NCBI GenBank assembly: GCA_021613535.1
Contig: CP075496.1
Coordinates: 558,001 to 622,000 of the forward strand
Direction of reading: 5' to 3'
Source of the DNA: Adineta vaga
Taxonomy: Eukaryota > Animalia > Rotifera
DNA: 64,000 nucleotides
Below are positions 23,024 to 64,000 of this stretch, piece by piece. A program made the position numbers and the translations under genes. How positions within the stretch are numbered: position 1 is the first letter of the stretch; each line of letters starts with the position of its first letter. The notes beneath the pieces are model-generated. The model ran no database searches. It saw nothing but the letters and a program-made list of their open reading frames with translations, and was not told the DNA's origin.

Positions 23024-23290
23024 CACTGTAAAAAAAGCGCAGAATAATAAACCCTTTTTAGGGATTTATTAACCTTATGAGTTATAGGAAGGGTTTTTTA
23101 TACGTTGCACTTTCGTATACCCTTAAAGGTTTCATTAACTTCATAAACCCTCGAAAACGACTTTTCTTTTCTACGGTTCTTCTGAAGGGCTTATGAGAGG
23201 GTACTTTACGTTCATAAACCTAAATAGGGTTCATGTCACGACCATCAATCCTTTTCGAGGGTTTGTAATTCAACGCTTTTTTTTACAGTG
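23024..23290. mobile_element. MITE, CACTG...CAGTG termini, TA target duplication (CMC/EnSpm-like)
   Basis: TA|cactgtaaaaaaagcg ... cgcttttttttacagtg|TA; imperfect TIR of about 30-40 bp. Confidence 0.85.
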
Positions 23291-23339: not shown

Positions 23340-24083
23340 CAGTTGTAAGAGGCGACCCTGGGCTGTCGGTAGCCAATCGTCTGTTCATCAGGCTTCCAAT
23401 CTCTAGCTGAACATTAAACAACTCTTGCTAACGAAAAGAAACATAGATGCGTAAATGCACAAAATCATGTTTTCTTCGGCGGGTGGATTGTTAGGTCTTG
23501 TGTGAGACAATCAAAGGAGGAAATGATAATTAAGCAATTGAAGCAATATCGAATACAAATAGCAGCGTTAAGCGAAACGTGTATGTATGATTTCGGTGTT
23601 AGATTAGTAAGCAACTACACGATGATATATTCAGGTGTATCACGCGACAGTAAAGCACGAAAAGCTCATGGCGTAGCAATATGCCTTGATGAAACTGTTA
23701 CGAAGGTTTGGAAGGATTCAGGAAGTGAATGGGAGCGAATAAGCGAACGAATTGTCAAAATTCGCATGCATTGTTCACCTATTCATATTACCATAGTTGC
23801 AGTATATTCTCCTGTTAATTCGATAACTAAATAAATGGCTGATGAAAGTGATAAATTCTATATTGATTTGCAAGATACAATCAATAACGTGTCGACTAAC
23901 GACATGGTCATGATAATGAGTGACCTAAATGCCCGAGTTGGTAACAACTAACAAAAACGATAACAACACTAGATAAGAAGTAGTACTGGGCCATTCACAG
24001 TAGACGCAGAAAATGAGAATGGGACAAGACTTACTGACTTCTGTGAAATCAGCAATATCATAATAGCAAACACATTTTTCAAA
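23340..24083 (+). mobile_element. Degenerate RTE-type non-LTR retrotransposon 5' fragment (APE endonuclease)
   Basis: Motifs IAALSET, HGVAI, ISERIVKIR, IVAVYSP, DKFY.DLQ, SDLNARVG, NENG.RL.DFC..N..IANTFF. Several in-frame stops, and no reverse transcriptase follows. Confidence 0.85.
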
Positions 24084-49307: not shown

Positions 49308-52300
49308 TTATTTCTTTTCTTTTAAAATTTGACAATTTTTCCAATAATTTAAATAAAGTTTAATTAAATTTGAATCAATCGATGGACAATTCTTTAAAAC
49401 TTGTGAGTCTTCAACAGTTTTCTTTGTTTCAAATTTCGATGATTTTGAATTATCTTTTTTCTTATAAATTTGTTCTAAAAATGACGATAATTTAATCAAT
49501 GGGTTAGTTGTATCTGTTGTTGTTAAAATTGAATTAAGAAATTCTTCTTTCGATATAATATCAAAATCAAGTCCACTTTCTCGAAGAGAATTTAAATAAT
49601 TATCATATTTAATATTTTGTGGATTAAGAAGATGATAAACATGTTGATCTTTAGATGATTTTAATGCTAATTCAACTAATGCACTACTACAAATATCAAC
49701 AGGTATCCAATTAATATCATTTCCAATATTTGGCATTTTATGTAATTGTCCAGCACCCGCATAAATCATCATAGCAGCCATTTCCGTTGAATTCCATATT
49801 CCATTTTGTGTATCTCCACTGATTTGACCAACACGATAAATCTTAACCGGAACATCTAAATAAAATCGAATTGTTAAAGAAAAAAAAAGAAAAAAACGAT
49901 TTACTCCAAAATTTGTTTGCAGTCCAACATAAATGTTCACTGATGAATTTACTTTGTCCATAACCTTGTGGTAATGCAATTTGTACTTGTTTTGGTAAAG
50001 GTTCTTCTTGAACTGAATTAAGAAGACCTGATGATGCTGATGAAATACTTGAAATAAAATGAAATTGAATTTGATTAAACGAAGATAATTTTAGAAGATG
50101 ATAAACACCAAGAATTGAATCCATTTCAAAATCTTTAATTGTTTGATTAAAATTCATTTTCCATGCTGAATGTATTATATCAGTTAATTCATTTTTTAAT
50201 TCTTCATAAATTTCTTTTGTTTGTCCAAGATATTCTTCAGTTAAATTCATTGATGAAGATAAAATAATTAAACGTTGTTCTTCTAAAGATTTTGTAAGAA
50301 TAGAAAGATCTAATTGTCTTTGTTGAAATGATTCAAATAAACGTTCTAGAGGATTTGTTCCACGTAAAAGACAATAAACACGTTTAACAATTAGTGATGA
50401 TTGATTGAGTAGATCACGAAGAGTAAAACATCCTAATGAACCATTTGCACCTGTAAGAAGAAAAACTCGATGATTTCCTTGTTGATTTCTTTGTGTTATT
50501 GAAGATGATGAATTTGATTGAATTAATTCGATATATTTTTGAAGAATATCTTCGGTTAATTGATAATGAAAAGGATCATTATTTTCTTGAATAGAATTCG
50601 ATTCTAAATGAATTAAATCAAATAATTTTTGAGTCATTTGATCAATTGATGAATATTCATAAAGAAAATTTTTTGGAATTTGACAAAGATTTTCGGAAAT
50701 CGAATTTCTTAATTCAACAATTTGTAAAGAATTAATACCAAAATCAAAAATGGATTTTGAAGAATCAATTTCATCTTCAATAATTGATTGAAATTTATCA
50801 TGAAGATATTTTTCAATTGTTTCTTTTGTCCAATTTATTGTTTGTAAAACTTTTTTTTCTTCTTCATATTTTTTATTTAAAAATTCATCATAAATTTGTG
50901 AAATTAAATTTGAATATAATTCATTGATTTTTTGTCGTTGAACATTTCCTTTATGTGTTATAGGTAAAATTTGATCTTTTGATAAAATATGAATTAAGGA
51001 TTTAACAACACGGGAATGTGATGGTGCATCTTTATTTGCTTCTTCGACAAATTTCCAAATTTCATTACGAATTTCTTTTTCATTTTGTTCAAAAATATTT
51101 TCATAATTTAATTCAATTAATGCTGCTGTACAGAATTGATTATGTCCAATAATAACAACACGTTTAACTAATGGACAAGATTGAATTGTATTTTCAATTG
51201 GAATTGGATTAGTTTTTTCCCCAGTTATGTGAACTAATGTATCATCTTGTCGTCCTAAAACTCGATAAAAACCGGAATTTGGTGGATCTTCAAGTAAAAC
51301 ATCACCAACAATATAACAACCATCGGATGTTCTCGGAATATTTTCAGCTAAGAAAGGATCATTGGGTAAATGAATAAACATTTTTTCATTGGGATTTTGC
51401 GCATCCGAAGGTGTTTCGATTCGAATATAGGGTTTTCGACTTGATGGTAACTCCATATATTTCCATCGTTGATCATAAGGATGAAAATTATTCACAAGAA
51501 CAAGACCAGTTTCTATTCAATTCAACTATTTTATATTTATAGACGAAGGAAAGGAAATTAAATACCTGTTGAACCATAAACACTAAGTAAAACAATATTA
51601 TTTTCCACTAAAACTTTACATAAATCATCTGGACAACCAGCTCCACCATACATAACAAATTTGAGTTTTTGTAAAGGTTTTAAACCAATATGTTGATTTT
51701 TTTCTAAAAGTACTTCACGAATTAGTTGTTCAAGTAAACTTGGTACTGTAATAAGTGCAGTTATTCCATTATCGACTTGTATATTATGTAATAATTCATC
51801 AGGTTTTGGTGGAAATGTTACGCATAATGGTAATGCATAAGCACAACCTGTTAATATTGCACGAACTGTTCCGTTAAATGCTAAGAGATGAAATCTTAAT
51901 AGAAAATATTCTTTGAAATGAAAAGATAAAGAGAAAAGAAAATCTTACAAAGCAGCCCATGTAATAACAATATCATTTTCATTCCAAAAATGTTTATTAA
52001 TTGATAAATAAGATGAATAACTGATTAAAAAATATCGATTTGTTAAATAAATTGGTTTAGGATGCGATGTACTTCCAGAACTATAGAAGAAAGATTATCA
52101 TTATTGAATTCTTTTGCTTTGTATCTTACCTATGAAGAATAACAACAACTTGATTTAATTGATTAGAATTATGTTTTGATTTAAATGTTGATTGAACATC
52201 TTTTAATTTTAATAAATTTTCAATGAGAAATTCTTCTGAATCTAAAAGTAAAATTTTTAATGATTGAAGTTGAGAATTTTCTTGTTGAATTGTTTTTATC

Positions 52301-52924: not shown

Positions 52925-54294
52925 AACGAAGATCCTCATTTTGGCTGGACATTAATTCAAACGTATGAAGAAATTGATTATAAATTATATGTTCTTAATT
53001 TTACATCACAAAAATGGCTTGATGGTAAAGAAAAAGAAAACAATATTTTAAATCATAAAAAGAAATCTTTTTTTAAAGAAACCTATTCATCACGATCCAT
53101 TTGGTGCCATTATTTATGTATAACAGTACCATAGAAATTAACTCGACCATATAAAGCATTTTTGCTCATTGATCAAGGAAGTAATAATGATCGGTATGTT
53201 AAAAGAATTTACTTTTCTTTTGATTTTCTTTGTCTTTAAAAGTATTCCTCAACCTCAAGATGATTTTGTTGCATTAACAGCAATGGTTGCTGTTGGAATC
53301 GGAAGTGTTACAGCTGATCTTCAAGATATTCCAAATGGACCAATTCGTTTTATGGTTTGTTTTCTAATTTCAATCGAAATATTTATTCTTTTTGAAATAA
53401 ATAGGATGATCCAACAAAGCTTGATTAACAGCTGCAGTTGATACTGAATGACTTGTTGCTGCGATATCAATTGTTATGAATATATTAAATTTTCGAACAG
53501 TAAAAAATTCTTTCAACTTTCTTTGAAGGAAAAACTATTTCTTATTTGATCTTTTAGAATTTACATCATATTTATCGAGTAAATTAAAGAAACAATAATT
53601 TTAGTCACTAGTTGGTTGGACATTTGCATGTCAAAATTATTATAAATTAAATATAACTCAATATGTTGATAATGATAATATGAAAAAATGATCAGCAACT
53701 ATTGATCCATTAAGTAAGATTTTATTGAGAATATTTATATCAAATATCATTTGTAATAACAAAGATTATATTAATCGATTTTCCAAAACAAAAATTTGAG
53801 TGTGTATGATGAACGACCATTATCTAAACTTCAATCGATTAAATCTTCGAATAATACTCATGGTTATATTCGTGCAACTGTTGATTTTAGTATTGGACCA
53901 GAACCAATAAGTGCAATTGTTTATCGTGCTCGTACTCTTGATGATAAACGACGTGATTTTCGTCTTCTTATTGGAAACCCAAATGATCCAAAAAAAGCCA
54001 TGGCTAATCCTGTTTTTTGGTTTTCAACAAATCTTGTTACTGAAGTAAATATTTAATTAATAAGATTTCTTTGTTTTAAAAAGAAAGAATATTTTAAGGA
54101 AGAAACAAAATCAACAATTATTTGTTCGTTAACAATTGAAAATCCAACAAGTGGTTGGGAAGGTTTTCTTATTCAAGCTAATTTCCTGGTCCAGATGGAT
54201 CTGTTTTAGAATTAACAACAGAAACACAAATCATTCTGATATTTATCCAATTGACGATTGTCATGATGAACAATGTTTAGGTACACTTGTTTAA
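52925..54294 (+). pseudogene. PqaA/AprA-like (PhoPQ-activated pathogenicity-related) hydrolase pseudogene
   Basis: LNFTSQKWLD, IWCHYLCITVP*, LQDIPNGPI, NLHHIYR, GWTFA, IDPL, RRDFRL, LTTE...CLGTLV*. Several in-frame stops and frameshifts; the GxSKRGW catalytic segment is deleted; introns retained. Confidence 0.78.
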
Positions 54295-55259
54295 GTTTTT
54301 ATTTAAAGAAAAAATGAGAATGATTCATTGTATTCCAGAGAGAATTGATTCAATTACTATGATGAAATGTGTATTTAGATAGTTATAAATGGTATCTTAA
54401 GTTCATTATTCAGTCGAAAGCAAAAATAGATGGAAATAGCATCCACGTCGACCAATTCAAGATATAAAAAGATAATATTCGAGAATTATATTTTCAGATA
54501 ATAAGTAAAGGAATATTGTTTTTTCTCTCTTTATATATTCAATGATCTAGAATCTCTTTCTTTAATAATTTCAGATACTGATCATAATCATAAATGTAAG
54601 TGAACATGCTGTATTTATATTAGAATCGATTAGCTTTTCTAATTCATAATATTCCATTATAAATGTTCATCTTAGACAAAGTAAGTTTATCGATAGAGAT
54701 AATATGACACATCATTGCAGCATTCTTTATGCTTTAAATAAATCAAGATGTAGCGGACATATTTTAATGAATTTAATGAAAGAAAACAAATGTAAGTTTA
54801 TTTTTCGTTTTCGACTATACTGATTATCGAACAAAATGATTAATCTTATAAGTTAAATAATTACAGCTATTTGAATTGAATTGAAATAATCGCCTACGGT
54901 ATAACACTTTCATTCATTTTTCCGTCGCATTCTCATATAGCAAGAGTCTGAGAAAATGAGTTTTTCTTCCTTGTAAAATTATGTTCATAAATATAAATTT
55001 CACTATAATGATAGTTGATAAATACTATTCGAAGTTACTATAGTTTGATGAAAGAGATTTTTTGTCAACTTATTTTATATACATATACGAACACATGAAA
55101 TGACAATAACCAAATAGACAAAAAAAAGTTCACAAATACATCAATATTGTCATAAAGAATGATATAGAAATACAAATGTTCTTTTTATTTGTACAAAAAA
55201 AAAGAGATTTATTCATCTTTTTATGCTGTCTTGATAAATTAATAGATTTATCATGATAA

Positions 55260-56720
55260 TCAATTAATTGAAGCCATATCTATTTTGCGACCAACACTAT
55301 TTGTTTGTTTCATTCTTTTGATTGACTTTTTTCGATTTTGATTTTGTCTATATAATACAAAAGAAAATTATTTCATATATTTTGTTTTTTCCCTACTCAC
55401 TTTCTAGTTTTTAATTCACGTTTATGTTCATTTATTATTTGTATAAATTCATTCTTCTTTTGCTCCTTTTCAGAGATTAGTTTTCTCATATCACCATCCA
55501 TTTTTTGCAGCTGTTTATTGATCTGTTTTAGCTGTTGAACTGTTTTTTTAATTTTTGTTTCATATTGGCCTATCTGATTATCAAATTTTTTCATCACAAT
55601 AGAATTTTCTTCTTCTAAATTCTTCATAAAGTTATCTTCAGAATCATAATCGTCGACTAATTCATCATTGATAAATTTATCATTATCTGATACCAATGCA
55701 ATATTTTCTTTTTGATCATCACCTGTTGATTGCTTATTATCAACAATTGCTGGTGAATCATTGTCTAATGATGATGATAAAATTTCAATGAATTGATCGC
55801 ACTGAAAAAAATTTCCGTTGAATGATAAACCCTCAAAAAGACTTTATAACTGAAAAATTAGTTTATCAGCGTGATCTACCCTTTTTTCTTGAAAAATCCA
55901 AAAAAGATTTATTATCCATTGGAAACTGATAAAACTAAGGATTGATTCCCTCTTGATAAATCCTTTTTGTATTGATCAATTCAATCAATCCTCAGACACA
56001 GAGTTTATCATCGCCTTTGAGAGAACGTTCATTTTAGGTTTGATTTAATTGATTAATGGAAAAAGGACTTATCAAGAGAGAATCAATCCTTTGTTTTATC
56101 AGTTCGCAATAGATAATAAATCTTTTTTGGGTTTTTTAAGAAAAAAGGGTTCATCAAAGGGTAGATCACGCAGATAAACTAATTTTTCAGTGCAGCTCTT
56201 ACCGATAAACTGTTAGTTCCAACTGGATTGATTGTTGGTGATAAAACATTGAATAATTGAGCAAGTTTTACTGGTGACTGATCTGTAGTAATTGGACCAG
56301 TTGAGGGTGACGAATTTTCAATGATTTTAATACTGAAACAAAAGTATTATGCATCAATTGCTGTATTAATAATGAAAACTGACTTTGTTAAACGATCACT
56401 TAATGATTCATCATTGTTTGTTTGTTTAACACGTTTCTTTGGTAAATCTAGTGGTATTTCTAAAAAAATAAAGATTATCATTTTTACGGAAAAAAAGCTC
56501 TATAATATTTTCAATTCTTGCCTCCTTTCTCGAAGTAGATTGTAATGTTATGATAAGTGGCGGTGCATTCGAATTAGTAGTAACAGCCGGATGTTTCAGG
56601 TGTTCTTTCGTTAGATGATTCAATGATTTTCGTAGACGTTTATTTACTGGTGGCTTCGTACCATCTATGATAATATTGTTCCATTGTTTGTCGAGTTTTT
56701 TTAAGATGATTTCTTTCATC
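55260..56720 (-). CDS. Multi-exon uncharacterised protein (low complexity + coiled coil) carrying a MITE; intactness uncertain
   Basis: Exons ~56460-56384, ~56332-56203, 55801-55402 and ~55347-55260 splice in frame. The junction with the upstream exon (~56720-56500) could not be resolved cleanly. Confidence 0.5.
55800..56192. mobile_element. Foldback MITE with CACTG...CAGTG termini and ~140-bp internal inverted arms
   Basis: Arms ~55849-55992 and ~56036-56192 are reverse complements (actgaaaaattagtttatc.gcgtgatctaccc...). An extra 49-bp CACTGAAAAAA-capped extension is at the left. Flanks are CG / CA (2-bp TSD with one mismatch). Confidence 0.88.
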
Positions 56721-57944
56721 TGAAAAAAAGTAATGATAAAGAATAATGAACAGACAATTACATATATGTATATATATATACACATATCCTCTTTACGAGC
56801 GACGAGCGTTCTTATTTCATAATTTTTATCTTTTTGGTTTTATTTTTATCCGTCTATTGTCCAGTTATACCAAGGTAGATTGGTCAGTCAGTACGAAATG
56901 AATAGGAAAAAACAACGAAAGATGTCACTATAGCAGCACTGATTATAACGCAAGAACGTACGATGCCAATCAATTATATCGAACTGATGAAAATGTTAAA
57001 CATATCTCACATAAATTATAAAATAATTTATCTAGAATTCTTAGTTTATAATAAACCAACTACTTTTTTATTTTTCTCATAATTGACAAACCAAAACGTC
57101 AATTAAAATAAAAACTAAAGGTCTCAATTTTTCAATTAGAAAATATATGATTTTCTTTTCGAAAATCTAAATTTTGCATAGGTTTGCAATGAGAGTATTA
57201 GAAATATCTCGTGTATTTTGTTATATGACATGCATGATATTTTGTGTTTTCTGATTCGGAATAATCGAAGATTACATGATGCATAATGTATATTGACGTA
57301 TTTAAAATGAATTGATTACATTTCAATGATGATTTCCATCATTATCTGTGTATGTATAGTGACAATCTTGAGGGTGAGGGTAAAGAATATTCCCTCATTT
57401 ACACCCATTATCAACTGCATGCTTTGGAAAAAGAATTTAGTTGATAAGTTCAATGATGAAATTTCAATGCATGTATATTTCACTTATCTCTTGTTAAGGT
57501 TATTGAACCGATGTTTAAGCTAATCGATCCAATGCAATGGAGCAAAAACCACATCTGAATTAATTTTAATAGTGTCAACAAAACATGTTTGTTCACATCA
57601 TTATAAGGGACCATCAGGTTTCCATTTAAATATGATTCGATCTGCACTACAAAATATTTTCTTTTGTAAAAAAAACACAGGATGATTGCTGTTTGTTTGA
57701 TCGCTAATGCAAACAGTCAACATGCCTATATGTAAACATAAGAAAACGTTGTTTTTTTTCAAAGTATTATTAAATAATAAATACATTTATTCAATCGAAT
57801 TTCTTTTCGATGAATTTTATTTATTCAGAATATTTTTAGAATAATCTGAATTGAAACCTAAATATTTGATTAAAATAAAGAAAAAGAACTTAAATTTCTT
57901 TAATGGGCAATGATGATAATTGAAAAATTGTTGATGATATAACA

Positions 57945-60399: not shown

Positions 60400-61335
60400 A
60401 ATCAAGACAATAAACATGTTTATTTTTTTTGGTAACTTCAAAGCTAATTCTACTGATGTTTTACCACAAGTATCCACGGGTATCCAATTAATATCATTTC
60501 CAATATTTGGCATTTTATGTAATTGTCCAGCATCAGCATAAATCATCATAGCAACCATTTCCGTTGAATTTCATATTCCATTTAGTGTATCTCTACTGAT
60601 TTGACCATCACGATAAGTATTAACCTGAACATTTAAAGAAATAAGTCATTACAAAGTATAGCAAAGAAAATAATTTACTCCAAAATTGATGTGCTACACC
60701 CAACATAGATGTTCACTGATGAATTTACTTTGTCCATAACCCTGTGGTAATGCAATTTGTATTTGTTTGTGTAACGGTTCTTCTTTAATAATAGAATAAA
60801 GACCTGATGATGCTGATGAAATACTTGAAATAAAATGAAATTGAATTTGATTATATGATGATAATTTTAAAAGATGATAAACACCAAGAATTGAATCCAA
60901 TTCAAGATCTTTAATTGTTTGATTAAAATTCATTTTCCATGCTGAATGTATTATATCAGTTAGATTTTCTTTTAATTTCTCATAAACTTCGTTTGTTTGT
61001 CCAAGATATTCTTCACTTAAATTCATTGGTGATGATAAAATAATTAAACGTTCATCAGTTAAAAGAGAACAATCTAATTGTCTTTGTTGAAATGCTTCCA
61101 ATAAACGTTCTTGAGGATTTGTTCCACGTAAAAGACAATAAATACGTTTAACAATTGATGATGATTGACAAAGTAGATCACGAAGAGTAAAAGATCCTAA
61201 TGAACCATTTGCACCTGTAAGAAGAAAAGTTCGTTCTTTTTTGCCAATTTTCTTTTGAGATAAAGGATTTGATCTAATTAGATTTTTTCTAGAATTTGTT
61301 CAGTTAATTGATAATGATATGGATTATTATTATTA
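60400..61335 (-). pseudogene. Truncated, decayed second copy of the NRPS-like reductase domain
   Basis: Colinear with ~49630-50590 (TFLLTGANGSLG, IHSAWKMNFN, GYGQSK) and keeps the last intron. Stops at ~60694 and ~60571; GQISG changed to GQISR; A and T domains absent. Confidence 0.88.
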
Positions 61336-61369
61336 ATTTCATTCACATTTGAACCTGATTGGTATTATC

Positions 61370-64000
61370 TATAAAGAATGTCCAGGCCTGCGAGGGAGGG
61401 ATTTATTAAATATTCATTTAGATTTTGCCATGGTTTTCACTATCTGGCAGTCCAAAGACAGGCATCATGTACTAACGAAATCATCCCAAAAGATTCCTCT
61501 ATCTTGAATCGAAAAAGAAATTTTTTATTTCCAAAGATACTATATATTCGATCCTTACTTTCAGTGCAAGAATTAGAACCATTTCGGTTCATATAGTGCC
61601 AGAAAAATGAAATTTCAACAATATATTTCATTAAAACAACTCTTGTTTCAAGTGACATCTTTGTTCAACAATGTTCATGTTTCAAGAGTATTGGTGTATT
61701 GTCTTGCTAACAATAACCATTGGTCATACTACATGCATTTTTTCTCCTTTCGTGAAGATGACCGCAATGAACAGAATAGAAAAAAAAGATTACTTTTTTA
61801 CTTTAGATGTATTTTATTTCTTCTCATTTGATACAGTAAAAATATATAAGAGCACATAGCATCAGTTTTTGCAACAATACGACGGAAAGATATAGTATAG
61901 TATTTGTATTTGTATTTGGATGTTTTCTATTTCTGTATTTCATAATGATTGACCAATACTATATGATAACTATATTATAGATGGGAAAAGTATATATTTC
62001 GAAACGATTACAAAATCAACGGCTTCGGTTGGAGCGTTTGAAAAGCACAAATTTGAAAAATACCATCGTAGAAACATTATGTGAAGACGTACCCATAATA
62101 AACTCACGTCCAATAACAACCACAGCAAAAAAACTGCAGTTAGCTCGTGCTCAACTTCGTTCTGAATCGAATTCATCAAAACAATCCATCATTAAAGACG
62201 AATTTGGAGTACATGATATTTCATATGATAATGTTAATATTGTTGTTAGTATTGAGATGATACTTAATTTGGTAAATAAAATGAGTTGTCCTTTATGTAA
62301 TTGTATTGGTGAGATGTCTCAAAAAGTTACACAACGTCGTGGTCTTGTCTATCATATTACATTTTCATGTACTTGTTCGTTCGAAACATCATTTACAAAT
62401 TCAACACAATTGGTTCGTTCAACTCCCACACGTATGGATGAACTGAACATGATGGCATGTGCGGCTGCTAATGTTGCTGGAATTAAACGAACAGGCTTGA
62501 CTACAATTTTAGGCATGTTGAATATTTTACCACCAATTCAGATTGAAAACTGGAATAAATATCAAAAAGTGTATTCAAATGCTTTGGATGTGGTGAAAGA
62601 TGAGTCTCTCGCAAGAGCCGGTAAAATTGAATAGTTTTTTAAATTTATTTCTTCTATACTATTTTTTTCATATACTTATATTTGTAGCTGAAGAAGCAGC
62701 AGAACAATCATCGGAACCTGCTGATCACGAGGGAATTACAAATATTAAAGTATCAATTGATGGTACATGGCTAACTCGGCATGGTCATTCTAGTTTACAT
62801 GGAATTTCAACTGTTTGTTCAACAGCAGATCCTTCAAAAGTCTTAGATTTCGAATGTCTAAGTCGACACTGTACTACTTGTTCGGGCTTATTAGGAATTA
62901 AAGAACACAGTCCTGAACTGTATCAACAACGTTTAGCAGAACATCTCAAGAATGGTTGTGAGCAAAATCATTTAGGTTCATCAGGTGGAATGGAAGCTGC
63001 AGGTTAGAAGACGTTATTTCAAAAGAGTTTAATTAATAGGTTTGGAGCTTTTTAGGTGTTGTTAAAATATTTTGTCGATCAGAAGCTAAACATCTATTAC
63101 GATATACTACATTTATTGCTGATGGTGATGCTAACAATGAACGTGCGCTTCTTGATGCTGCACCATACAGCGAAATTCCTATTCAACGTCTTCAATGTAT
63201 AAATCATTTTTCCAAACGGTAATATTGTTATCTCTGTAATAATAGTACTTCAACTTTTTATATTTTATACAGAATGCGTACTGCTTTGGAAGCAGTCAAA
63301 AAAGATTATAGCAATAGAAAATTAGAAGATGGTTTAGCAATTGGAGGTCGAAATGGACGATTGACTGATGATAAAATCCATCAATTAACTGTTTACTATG
63401 GTTCAGCTATTCGATCTCATGTCAATGATTTGGAATCAATGAAAGCTGCTTGTTGGGGTATGTATTATTGATATATTAATATCTGTAATAAATATTTCTA
63501 TATTTTAGCTGCTTTTCATCATCATAATACTACACGTGAAAATCGTAGTCATGATTGTGGTGATCCAACAAAGTGTTATTTCTGCAAAAATAAATCATTT
63601 GATCCTAAAAAACGTACTTTAGCACCTGCAGTCTTGAATGTGATTCGTCCTGTGTATGAAAAGATGTGTTCAACTGAAGTCTTGTCAAAAGTGGTCGATG
63701 GAGGAACTACAAATCCAAATGAATCTTTTCACAGTTATATTTGGTCTCTATGTCCTAAAACAAGATTTCATTCAGCTCATCAGGTACGTGATGCTGCTTC
63801 ACTTGCTACTATGCTTTATAATGATGGTCATCAACTATCAATCATGAATCTACTTCGTCAATGTGGTATTCAAAGTGCGATTCCTGCATGTATTCGAATG
63901 CTACAATTAACTGATGATCAACGAATAAAAGAAAATAGATCGAAAACTAAAGGAAATAAACAAAAACAACGACATCAACGATTAATAACTGAACAACGTC
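61370..64000 (+). mobile_element. Autonomous DNA transposon carrying the transposase; left boundary approximate
   Basis: Homology to the reductase gene stops at ~61335, followed by a GC-richer motif (aaagaatgtccaggcctgcgagggaggg) about 600 bp before the transposase ATG. The right end is outside the window, so TIR and TSD are unverified. Confidence 0.55.
61981..64000 (+). CDS. DDE transposase of the animal 'Mutator-like' (Kolobok-related) type; 4 introns, open frame running off the window
   Basis: Introns 62621-62687, 63003-63055, 63219-63272 and 63459-63508. Motifs CPLC..CTC, VSIDGTW..GHSS.HG, NHLGSSGGME, FIADGDA, QCINHFSKR, YYGSAIR, TTNPNESFHSYIWSLCPK (D-D-E triad intact). Confidence 0.88.

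What the first reader, a model, noticed from the sequence alone, without database searches (positions are those of the whole stretch)
55799..56203. A MITE inside an exon that can be spliced out in frame: candidate transposon-created intron
Seen: on the minus strand the host exon reads AAC AGT TTA TCG GTA AGA GCT G|CACTGAAAAATT...(393-bp element)...TTTTTTTCAGTG|C GAT CAA TTC. Deleting the element plus one 2-bp TSD copy restores ...LSVRADQFIEIL..., so the insertion is exonic; unspliced read-through hits a stop almost immediately. The host codons GTA AGA form a consensus donor (GTAAGA, starting at 56202), and the element's own terminus supplies a consensus acceptor (TTTTTTTCAG, ending at 55802). 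Splicing this 401-nt GT-AG intron gives TCG|TGC GAT CAA, which is in frame and changes VRA to C. Inference: CACTG(T)AAAAA-ended elements carry a built-in acceptor on both strands and could act as introner-like intron generators. The ~140-bp foldback could bring donor and acceptor together, mimicking the ~55-nt host intron size. Caveat: the host gene's upstream junction is unclear and it may be decaying.
Basis: partly seen in the sequence, partly recalled or inferred. Interest (0 to 1): 0.8.

Follow-up and report, generated by a model that had tools for sequence, protein, structure and literature searches.

The report
Transposon in exon, possibly spliced out
A small, old DNA transposon sits inside a coding exon of a rotifer (Adineta vaga) gene and has all the sequence signals to be cut out of the message as a new in-frame intron, but no RNA evidence was available, the host gene has a second defect, and the transposon family is far too small to be a general intron maker.

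Summary
On the minus strand a 393-bp CACTG...CAGTG foldback MITE (56192-55800) interrupts an exon. A GTAAGA donor (56202) lies in host codons, and the element's own end supplies TTTTTTTCAG (ending 55802). Together they define a 401-nt GT-AG intron that joins TCG|TGC in frame. The genome is Adineta vaga AV20.

The insertion is truly exonic. The A. ricciae ortholog and four other bdelloid homologues have this exon uninterrupted.

New details:
- The copy is old: its arms are 88% complementary, against 97-99% in young copies.
- It has lost 49 nt of one outer repeat through a deletion between 9-nt direct repeats. This partly frees the acceptor from the hairpin.
- Its 2-bp target-site duplication is imperfect (TG/CG).

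The GenBank gene model (UJR29761.1) uses exactly this intron. However, that model is a chimera, made after repeat masking, so it is weak evidence.

Against a working gene: the ancestral donor of intron 1 is lost, leaving only a 28-nt mini-intron, and an intact tandem paralogue exists.

The "introner-like generator" idea is not supported. There are about 12 termini genome-wide, and no other copy shows this layout.

Verdict: a plausible single transposon-to-intron conversion, which is a known kind of event, unproven at the RNA level. Two unchecked notes of this scan report other MITE-in-exon candidates in this genome.

The parts
55800..56192 (-). 393-bp foldback MITE with CACTG...CAGTG ends. It is an old copy that lacks 49 nt of its left outer terminal repeat.
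   Evidence: It is 79/79/73% identical to three ~453/417-bp copies elsewhere in the genome, and its arms are 88% self-complementary.
55800..55848 (-). The surviving outer terminal repeat (the tail). It is left unpaired by the 49-nt deletion on the other side. It carries a candidate branch point (TTTAT), a T7 tract and the CAG acceptor.
   Evidence: Mean unpaired probability is 0.32 here, against 0.00 if the lost 49 nt are put back.
55849..56191 (-). The hairpin-forming body of the element, about 170 bp of stem.
56197..56202 (-). Candidate 5' splice site GTAAGA, formed by the host codons GTA AGA. It lies 10 nt upstream of the element.
   Evidence: The public model P0001 ends an exon at ...NSLS.
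55802..55811 (-). Candidate 3' splice site TTTTTTTCAG, inside the element's terminal repeat.
   Evidence: P0001 resumes with CDQFIEIL.
55802..56202 (-). Proposed 401-nt GT-AG intron. It is in frame and replaces Val-Arg-Ala with Cys.
56203..56332 (-). Host exon part upstream of the element (exon 3 of the model: ...IKIIENSSPS...NSLS).
   Evidence: It is 58% identical to residues 1-36 of P0002, E 5e-10.
55401..55801 (-). Host exon part downstream of the element (CDQFIEIL...KTR), with the conserved coiled-coil region.
55263..55347 (-). Last host exon. It follows a 53-nt GTGAGT...TATAG intron (55400-55348).
56384..56459 (-). Host exon 2 (IPLDLPKK...DRLT). It is followed by a 51-nt GTCAGT...TTTCAG intron (56383-56333).
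56488..56719 (-). Host exon 1 (MKEIILKK...). The ancestral donor is absent, and the only in-frame junction to exon 2 is a 28-nt GTAAAA...TTTAG mini-intron (56487-56460).

Best explanation
A non-autonomous cut-and-paste DNA transposon inserted long ago into the variable linker-coding part of the large exon of a bdelloid-specific coiled-coil protein gene of Adineta vaga. The element is a palindromic MITE with CACTG ends and a 2-bp target duplication, probably of the CACTA/Mirage/Chapaev group. It later lost 49 nt of one outer repeat through a deletion between 9-nt direct repeats.

Most likely the element is now removed from the pre-mRNA as a 401-nt GT-AG intron:
- The donor is a chance GTAAGA in host codons 10 nt upstream.
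- The candidate branch point, T-tract and CAG come from the element's remaining outer repeat.
- The ~170-bp hairpin loops out the body, so the spliceosome sees about 58 unpaired nt, close to the normal intron size in this genus.
- The message stays in frame, with Val-Arg-Ala replaced by Cys.

Shown: the exonic insertion, the signals, the reading frame, the fold, the age and the deletion. Inferred: transcription, actual splicing, and any role of the deletion or the hairpin.
For: - The sequence and frames were read directly.
- The orthologous exon is uninterrupted in A. ricciae and in P0002, P0003, P0007 and P0008.
- The donor is GTAAGA and the acceptor T7CAG. A TTTAT candidate branch point lies about 27 nt upstream of the AG.
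- The hairpin folds at -184.6 kcal/mol and leaves about 10 + 48 nt free. The median Adineta intron is 55-58 bp (PMC5916493).
- The acceptor region is 0.32 unpaired now, against 0.00 with the lost 49 nt restored.
- The insertion looks old: arms are 88% complementary against 97-99% in young copies. Yet all 305 host codons are open. The simulated chance of that under neutrality is 0.15 at 3% divergence and 0.02 at 6%.
- The host copy is as similar to outgroup P0002 as its intact paralogue is (about 59%, my count from the alignment, against 56%).
- GenBank model UJR29761.1 carries the junction ...NSLS|CDQF....
Against: - No RNA evidence could be reached. Protein searches found no transcript-derived protein.
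- The public model is a chimera that joins a reductase fragment at 61582-60730 to exon 2 across 4.3 kb and skips the gene's own exon 1. Its pipeline masked repeats first, which pushes a predictor to place an intron over the element.
- The ancestral intron-1 donor is lost. The only in-frame replacement is a 28-nt intron, below the usual 30-100 bp range.
- An intact tandem paralogue 12 kb away could make this copy dispensable.
- The age estimate assumes that the arms were perfectly complementary when the element inserted.
- A 170-bp perfect RNA duplex could instead attract RNA silencing.
Confidence: 0.42

Rival explanations
1. This is a plain gene-breaking insertion in a decaying duplicate. The gene is no longer made into a full protein, and the in-frame GT-AG pair is a coincidence that gene predictors exploit.
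For: - There are two independent oddities in one gene: the MITE in an exon and the loss of the ancestral intron-1 donor, which leaves a 28-nt mini-intron.
- An intact tandem paralogue with normal 65-, 53- and 57-nt introns exists.
- The only public model is a chimera, made after repeat masking.
- The gene family evolves fast and has no known domain.
- No transcript-derived protein was found.
Against: - There is no stop or frameshift in any of the five exon pieces (305 codons), although the insertion looks old.
- The gene shows no faster change than its paralogue against outgroups.
- By my estimate, a strong in-frame donor at the right distance is expected in only about 2% of random insertions.
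Confidence: 0.36
2. The strong acceptor at the element's end is used for spliced-leader trans-splicing, or an internal start is used. Only the downstream conserved coiled-coil part (from the first Met of the downstream exon part, ...MKNLEEEN...) would then be made, and the element marks the start of a shortened transcript rather than an intron.
For: - Earlier follow-ups of this scan reported spliced-leader RNA genes in this genome. Trans-splicing in rotifers is known to me from the literature, not tested here.
- The T7CAG acceptor with an unpaired upstream tail is also what a trans-splice site looks like.
- The conserved part of the protein lies wholly downstream.
- A broken exon 1-2 junction would not matter under this reading.
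Against: - The upstream exon pieces are still open and still similar to their homologues.
- No promoter or leader evidence was obtained.
Confidence: 0.1
3. The element landed in an intron that already existed at the GTAAGA donor.
For: With the element removed, GTAAGA is followed 43 nt later by ...TCATCATTAG, which looks like a short intron.
Against: - That acceptor is out of frame with the conserved downstream frame and runs into a stop after 35 codons.
- The A. ricciae ortholog and four other homologues have no intron anywhere in this exon.
- The stretch is open and aligns as protein with P0002 and P0009.
Confidence: 0.03
4. The element belongs to a true introner family, that is, transposons specialised to create introns at many sites.
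For: - The terminal repeat ends in a T-tract plus CAG on either strand.
- The terminal motif occurs in 66 metagenome contigs, mostly from moss samples.
- Two unchecked notes of this scan report MITEs of other families in exons of this genome.
Against: - Only about 12 termini exist in the genome.
- None of the other complete copies has flanking frames joined by such a splice.
- The share of copies in ORF-like DNA (3 of 10) equals the random base rate of 28%.
- In intact palindromes the acceptor is fully paired.
- Introner families were defined as at least four similar introns (PMC9860276).
Confidence: 0.03

Closest known systems
Transposon insertions in exons that are spliced out through sites in the element's ends and in host sequence. 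Examples are maize dSpm in bz-m13 and Ds in waxy alleles (reviewed by Purugganan and Wessler 1992, Genetica 86:295, cited in PMC4158355) and C. elegans Tc1. The details of these cases are from my own knowledge, not read here.
   Same: There is a single insertion in a coding exon. The acceptor is supplied by the terminal repeat of a CAC-ended element and the donor by host sequence. The message is restored with a small change in the protein.
   Different: Those cases are recent mutant alleles with RNA proof. This one is an old insertion, judged from one haploid assembly, in an animal with very short introns. It has a giant hairpin and a secondary deletion that exposes the acceptor, and no RNA proof.
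Introners (Micromonas, Aureococcus, dinoflagellates and others; PMC9860276, PMC11282704)
   Same: It is a short non-autonomous DNA transposon with inverted repeats and a short target duplication. [quoted passage not shown] That is one of the layouts described for introners.
   Different: Introners are families of at least four, and often hundreds, of similar introns. Here there is one candidate intron among about a dozen termini. Rotifers are not mentioned in the main text of that survey.
MITE-derived introns whose inverted repeats bring the intron ends together (Fritillaria borealis, euglenid non-conventional introns; PMC11282704)
   Same: The inverted repeats fold and shorten the effective distance between the intron ends.
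   Different: Those introns often have non-canonical ends and are numerous. Here the ends are canonical GT-AG, and only one end lies in the element.
CACTA/Mirage/Chapaev (CMC) superfamily MITEs
   Same: The termini are CACTG...CAGTG and the target duplication is 2 bp. Transposase_21 genes are present in the genome.
   Different: No autonomous element with matching ends was found near four transposase genes. Classical CACTA elements make 3-bp duplications (PMC4158355).

Membership tests
MITE (non-autonomous inverted-repeat DNA transposon) | Terminal inverted repeats | tested here: met
   Full copies have about 33-bp conserved ends and are near-perfect palindromes. The window copy keeps both CACTG/CAGTG ends but has lost 49 nt next to one of them.
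MITE (non-autonomous inverted-repeat DNA transposon) | Target-site duplication of fixed length | tested here: met
   The duplication is 2 bp in 3 of 4 other genomic copies and in most metagenome copies. In this copy it is TG against CG, so one position does not match.
MITE (non-autonomous inverted-repeat DNA transposon) | Small size, no coding capacity, several dispersed copies | tested here: met
   The copies are 177-453 bp and lie on five chromosomes.
CMC (CACTA/Mirage/Chapaev) superfamily | CACTR termini with a 2-4 bp duplication | tested here: met
   The termini are CACTG with 2-bp duplications. The superfamily criteria are from my own knowledge.
CMC (CACTA/Mirage/Chapaev) superfamily | An autonomous partner with the same ends and a Transposase_21-type gene | tested here: inconclusive
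   There are ten PF02992 hits in the genome. No matching ends were found within 20 kb around four of them.
Introner | A family of at least four similar introns within genes of one genome | tested here: not met
   There is one candidate intron. The other copies are intergenic, in repeats, or lack joined frames. The definition comes from PMC9860276.
Introner | The element supplies at least one splice site | tested here: met
   T7CAG lies in the terminal repeat. This was tested in sequence only.
Introner | Removal from mRNA shown by transcripts | not testable with these tools
   No RNA reads were available. Protein searches found no transcript-derived product.
Spliceosomal GT-AG intron | GT...AG with donor consensus, pyrimidine tract and branch point, keeping the reading frame | tested here: met
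   The signals are TCG|GTAAGA ... TTTAT ... T7CAG|TG, and the intron is 401 nt and in frame.
Spliceosomal GT-AG intron | Actually spliced in vivo | not testable with these tools
   Only a predicted gene model uses it.

The most novel reading that the evidence does not exclude
An animal intron gain caught with its full history. A MITE landed in a coding exon of an asexual rotifer. A chance host GTAAGA and the element's own end became the splice sites. A later 49-nt deletion between short repeats unmasked the acceptor from the element's hairpin, so the insertion turned into a working intron of normal effective length. Together with two other MITE-in-exon candidates of unrelated families noted in this genome (unchecked), this would mean that rescue of exonic transposon insertions by splicing is a recurrent route of intron gain in bdelloids.
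Probability: 0.25. Interest if true: 0.6.

Novelty: new member of a known kind. Interest (0 to 1): 0.38.

Why it matters
How new introns arise in animals is rarely seen directly. Most documented transposon-made introns are in protists, algae and fungi.

If RNA data confirm it, this would be a datable case in an animal with very short introns. An uninterrupted ortholog would serve as the "before" state, and the case would show a clear division of labour: donor from the host, acceptor from the element, and a hairpin that shortens the intron.

The suggested role of a secondary deletion in freeing the acceptor can be tested in a minigene. If the splice is not used, the locus is simply a duplicate gene on its way to decay.

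Tried and rejected
- **Empty site in the genome's own paralogue.** The tandem copy at C4:626022-626657 lacks the whole linker region, so it says nothing about the site. No ohnologue was found.
- **Closer relatives.** Protein searches in two length ranges found only the window's own model. A metagenome scan with exon peptides found nothing.
- **Host duplication made at insertion.** Both flanks of the element align to the same ~12-residue stretch of P0002 and P0009. At the DNA level the flanks are not significantly alike (24 of 500 shuffles do as well). I therefore read this as an old tandem-repeat linker, not a long target duplication.
- **Earlier intron at the GTAAGA donor.** Rejected because the frame fails and the orthologs have no intron there.
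- **My first reading of the last host intron as frame-shifted** came from a miscount. The donor is AA|GTGAGT and the frame is kept.
- **Autonomous partner.** Not found near four Transposase_21 genes.
- **Excision test on 14 other complete copies.** Three metagenome copies restore ORFs of 89 codons or more. This equals the random base rate (28%), and the ORFs have no Pfam match.
- **Papers on the maize dSpm case and on superfamily criteria** were not held.
- **Joined models.** Exon pieces were used by reference, and the only joined sequence used was the public protein P0001. The stop-codon simulation strung together whole-codon pieces of the five exon parts, only to count stops.

Full report
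**What the window is.** The window is C4:558001-622000 of a 100.8-Mb, six-contig genome. A protein identical to the window's translation is GenBank UJR29761.1, I4U23_017309, from Adineta vaga. The window is therefore part of the chromosome-level AV20 assembly of this bdelloid rotifer (PMC8494291). G+C is 20-36%.

**The observation.**
- On the minus strand a 393-bp element runs from CACTG at 56192 to CAGTG at 55800.
- The upstream frame ends ...TTA TCG GTA AGA GCT G. The downstream frame starts C GAT CAA TTC.
- Read-through stops after ...SVRAALKN.
- GT at 56202 and AG at 55802 bound a 401-nt intron that joins TCG to TGC GAT in frame.
- Removing the element plus 2 nt gives one 184-codon open frame.
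- The element folds into a single hairpin of -184.6 kcal/mol, z = -19. About 10 nt stay free after the donor and about 48 nt before the acceptor.

**What the element is.**
- The genome holds three longer relatives: C4:15103519-15103971, C2:16155802-16156254 and C3:19780190-19780606. They are 453/453/417 bp and 79/79/73% identical to this copy. There is also a 177-bp derivative and a few fragments.
- The relatives are near-perfect palindromes with about 33-bp conserved ends (CACTGAAAAAAATTTTCGTAGAATAATAAACCC) and 2-bp target duplications: AA/AA, TA/TA, TG/TG and TA/TT.
- A sister subfamily with CACTGT ends and TA duplications has a copy in the window at 23024-23290.
- Even a broad end pattern finds only 12 termini in the genome.
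- The same pattern occurs in 66 metagenome contigs, mostly from moss samples. The same moss samples yielded the contigs that encode the bdelloid homologue P0002.
- CACTG ends with 2-bp duplications point to the CACTA/Mirage/Chapaev group (my own knowledge). Transposase_21 genes exist in the genome, but I found no autonomous element with these ends.

**Two corrections to the finding.**
- The window copy is not complete. The alignment shows that 49 nt are missing just inside its left end. The gap lies between two copies of ACTGAAAAA, and deleting one repeat plus the spacer gives exactly the observed CACTGAAAAATTAG. The true terminus and the flanking host bases are therefore still in place.
- The flanking dinucleotides are TG and CG, so the duplication is imperfect.

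The copy also looks old. Its arms are 88% complementary, against 97-99% in the two young full copies.

**Is the insertion exonic?** Yes.
- The exon parts on both sides are homologous to a single stretch of related proteins. The upstream part matches residues 1-36 of P0002 (58%, E 5e-10). The downstream part matches residues 25-148 (53%, E 3e-41).
- P0002 is one continuous ORF on two metagenome contigs.
- In the A. ricciae ortholog P0009 the matching exon is an uninterrupted 441 nt, and the gene has four exons with introns of about 92, 56 and 53 nt.
- A pre-existing intron at this donor is thus excluded. The one short intron that could be drawn without the element is out of frame.
- The site lies in a variable, repeat-like linker. 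Both flanks align to the same ~12 residues of the outgroups. The DNA of the flanks is not significantly alike.

**Would it be spliced?** In favour:
- The donor TCG|GTAAGA is as good as or better than the gene family's other donors (GTCAGT, GTGAGT, GTAAAC, GTTAGT).
- The acceptor is T7CAG, with a TTTAT candidate branch point about 27 nt upstream.
- The unpaired length of about 58 nt matches the median intron of 55-58 bp in Adineta (PMC5916493).
- If the lost 49 nt are put back in silico, the last 45 nt of the intron become fully paired (unpaired probability 0.00, against 0.32 now). The deletion may therefore have exposed the acceptor.
- All 305 codons of the five exon parts are open. If each arm has changed by 3-6% since insertion, that has a simulated chance of 0.15-0.02 under neutrality.
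- The host copy is no more diverged from outgroups than its intact paralogue. Against P0002 it is about 59% identical (my count from the alignment), and the paralogue is 56%. Against P0009 the figures are 33% and 34%.
- GenBank's model contains ...NSLS|CDQFIEIL..., which is exactly this junction.

Against:
- That model joins a reductase fragment at 61582-60730 to exon 2 across about 4.3 kb and skips the gene's own first exon.
- The annotation pipeline masked repeats before prediction, so the model is weak evidence.
- No transcript-derived protein was found.
- The ancestral donor of intron 1, present in the paralogue and in A. ricciae, is absent. No GT occurs until a GTAAAA only 28 nt before the acceptor. 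This is below the usual 30-100 bp range.
- A tandem paralogue with normal introns lies 12 kb away, in a duplicated block that also includes the neighbouring gene.

**The wider claim.** The idea that such elements act as introner-like intron generators fails here.
- The family is tiny.
- The other genomic copies are intergenic or sit in repeats.
- Among 14 other complete copies, three metagenome copies restore long ORFs on excision. This equals the random base rate, and none shows a consistent in-frame splice.
- In the CACTGT subfamily the built-in GT and AG would leave 4 + 2 nt plus the 2-nt duplication. That is 8 nt, a frameshift.
- Introner families were defined as at least four similar introns (PMC9860276).

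**Comparison with what is known.**
- Splicing of exonic transposon insertions through sites in the element's ends is long known (Purugganan and Wessler 1992, cited in PMC4158355; details from my own knowledge).
- Introners that carry the 3' site and borrow the 5' site are described.
- Inverted repeats that bring intron ends together are described for MITE-derived introns (PMC11282704).
- This case would be a new member of that kind, in a rotifer, with the secondary deletion as its distinctive detail.
- Earlier unchecked notes of this scan list two more MITE-in-exon candidates in this genome. Follow-up notes report spliced-leader genes, which led to the trans-splicing rival.

**Verdict.** The exonic MITE insertion is real and old.
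- Conversion into a working intron: plausible but unproven, about 0.4.
- Decay of a redundant duplicate: nearly as likely, about 0.35.
- A general intron-generating family: not supported.

Noticed in passing
window 53796-56800 and G000:C4:624500-628200 (L017, L023): A tandem segmental duplication about 12.6 kb apart copies both the coiled-coil gene and its plus-strand neighbour (...ARTLDDKRRDFRLLIGNP...). The distal coiled-coil copy lacks the linker region and has ordinary 65-, 53- and 57-nt introns.
   Followed up: partly
window 56460-56487 (minus strand): The only in-frame junction between host exons 1 and 2 is a 28-nt GTAAAA...TTTAG mini-intron. The donor used in A. ricciae and in the paralogue is absent, and the former intron sequence is now read as open frame.
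   Followed up: partly
window 60730-61582 and 49954-50511 (minus strand): GenBank model UJR29761.1 fuses an NAD_binding_4 (PF07993) reductase fragment to the coiled-coil gene across a 4.3-kb intron, which is probably a wrong merge. A second copy of the reductase part, 76% identical, lies at 50511-49954.
   Followed up: partly
window 23024-23290: This is a 267-bp MITE of a sister subfamily (CACTGTAAAAAAAGCGCAGAATAATAAACCC ends, TA/TA duplication). Next to it is a 110-aa open frame (23502-23834) that I took by eye for a retrotransposon endonuclease; it was not searched.
   Followed up: partly
L062-L127 (metagenome contigs): The conserved end motif of this MITE group occurs in 66 metagenome contigs, mostly from moss-associated samples (Ga0116226-Ga0116231). 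Complete copies there are 111-496 bp and mostly have TA or TG duplications. The group seems widespread in wild bdelloids.
   Followed up: partly
G000:C3:19526926-19527107 and C3:17508826-17509007 (L009, L011): Two nearly identical loci 2 Mb apart each hold the same partial MITE copy with the same flanks and a long His/Thr-coding dinucleotide-type repeat. This is a segmental duplicate rather than two insertions.
   Followed up: no
G000:C3:19779387-19780241 (L008 698-1552): A 285-aa open frame runs right up to, and into, the start of the C3 MITE copy, so that copy may have landed in another coding sequence, possibly another mobile element. The frame was not identified.
   Followed up: no
window 55733-56260 (minus strand): The end of the upstream exon part (..AQLFNVLSPTIN..) and the start of the downstream part (DQFIEILSSSLDN..) both align to the same ~12 residues of P0002 and of the A. 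ricciae protein. The A. vaga gene thus has one extra ~23-residue linker unit, and the MITE sits at the boundary between the two units.
   Followed up: partly
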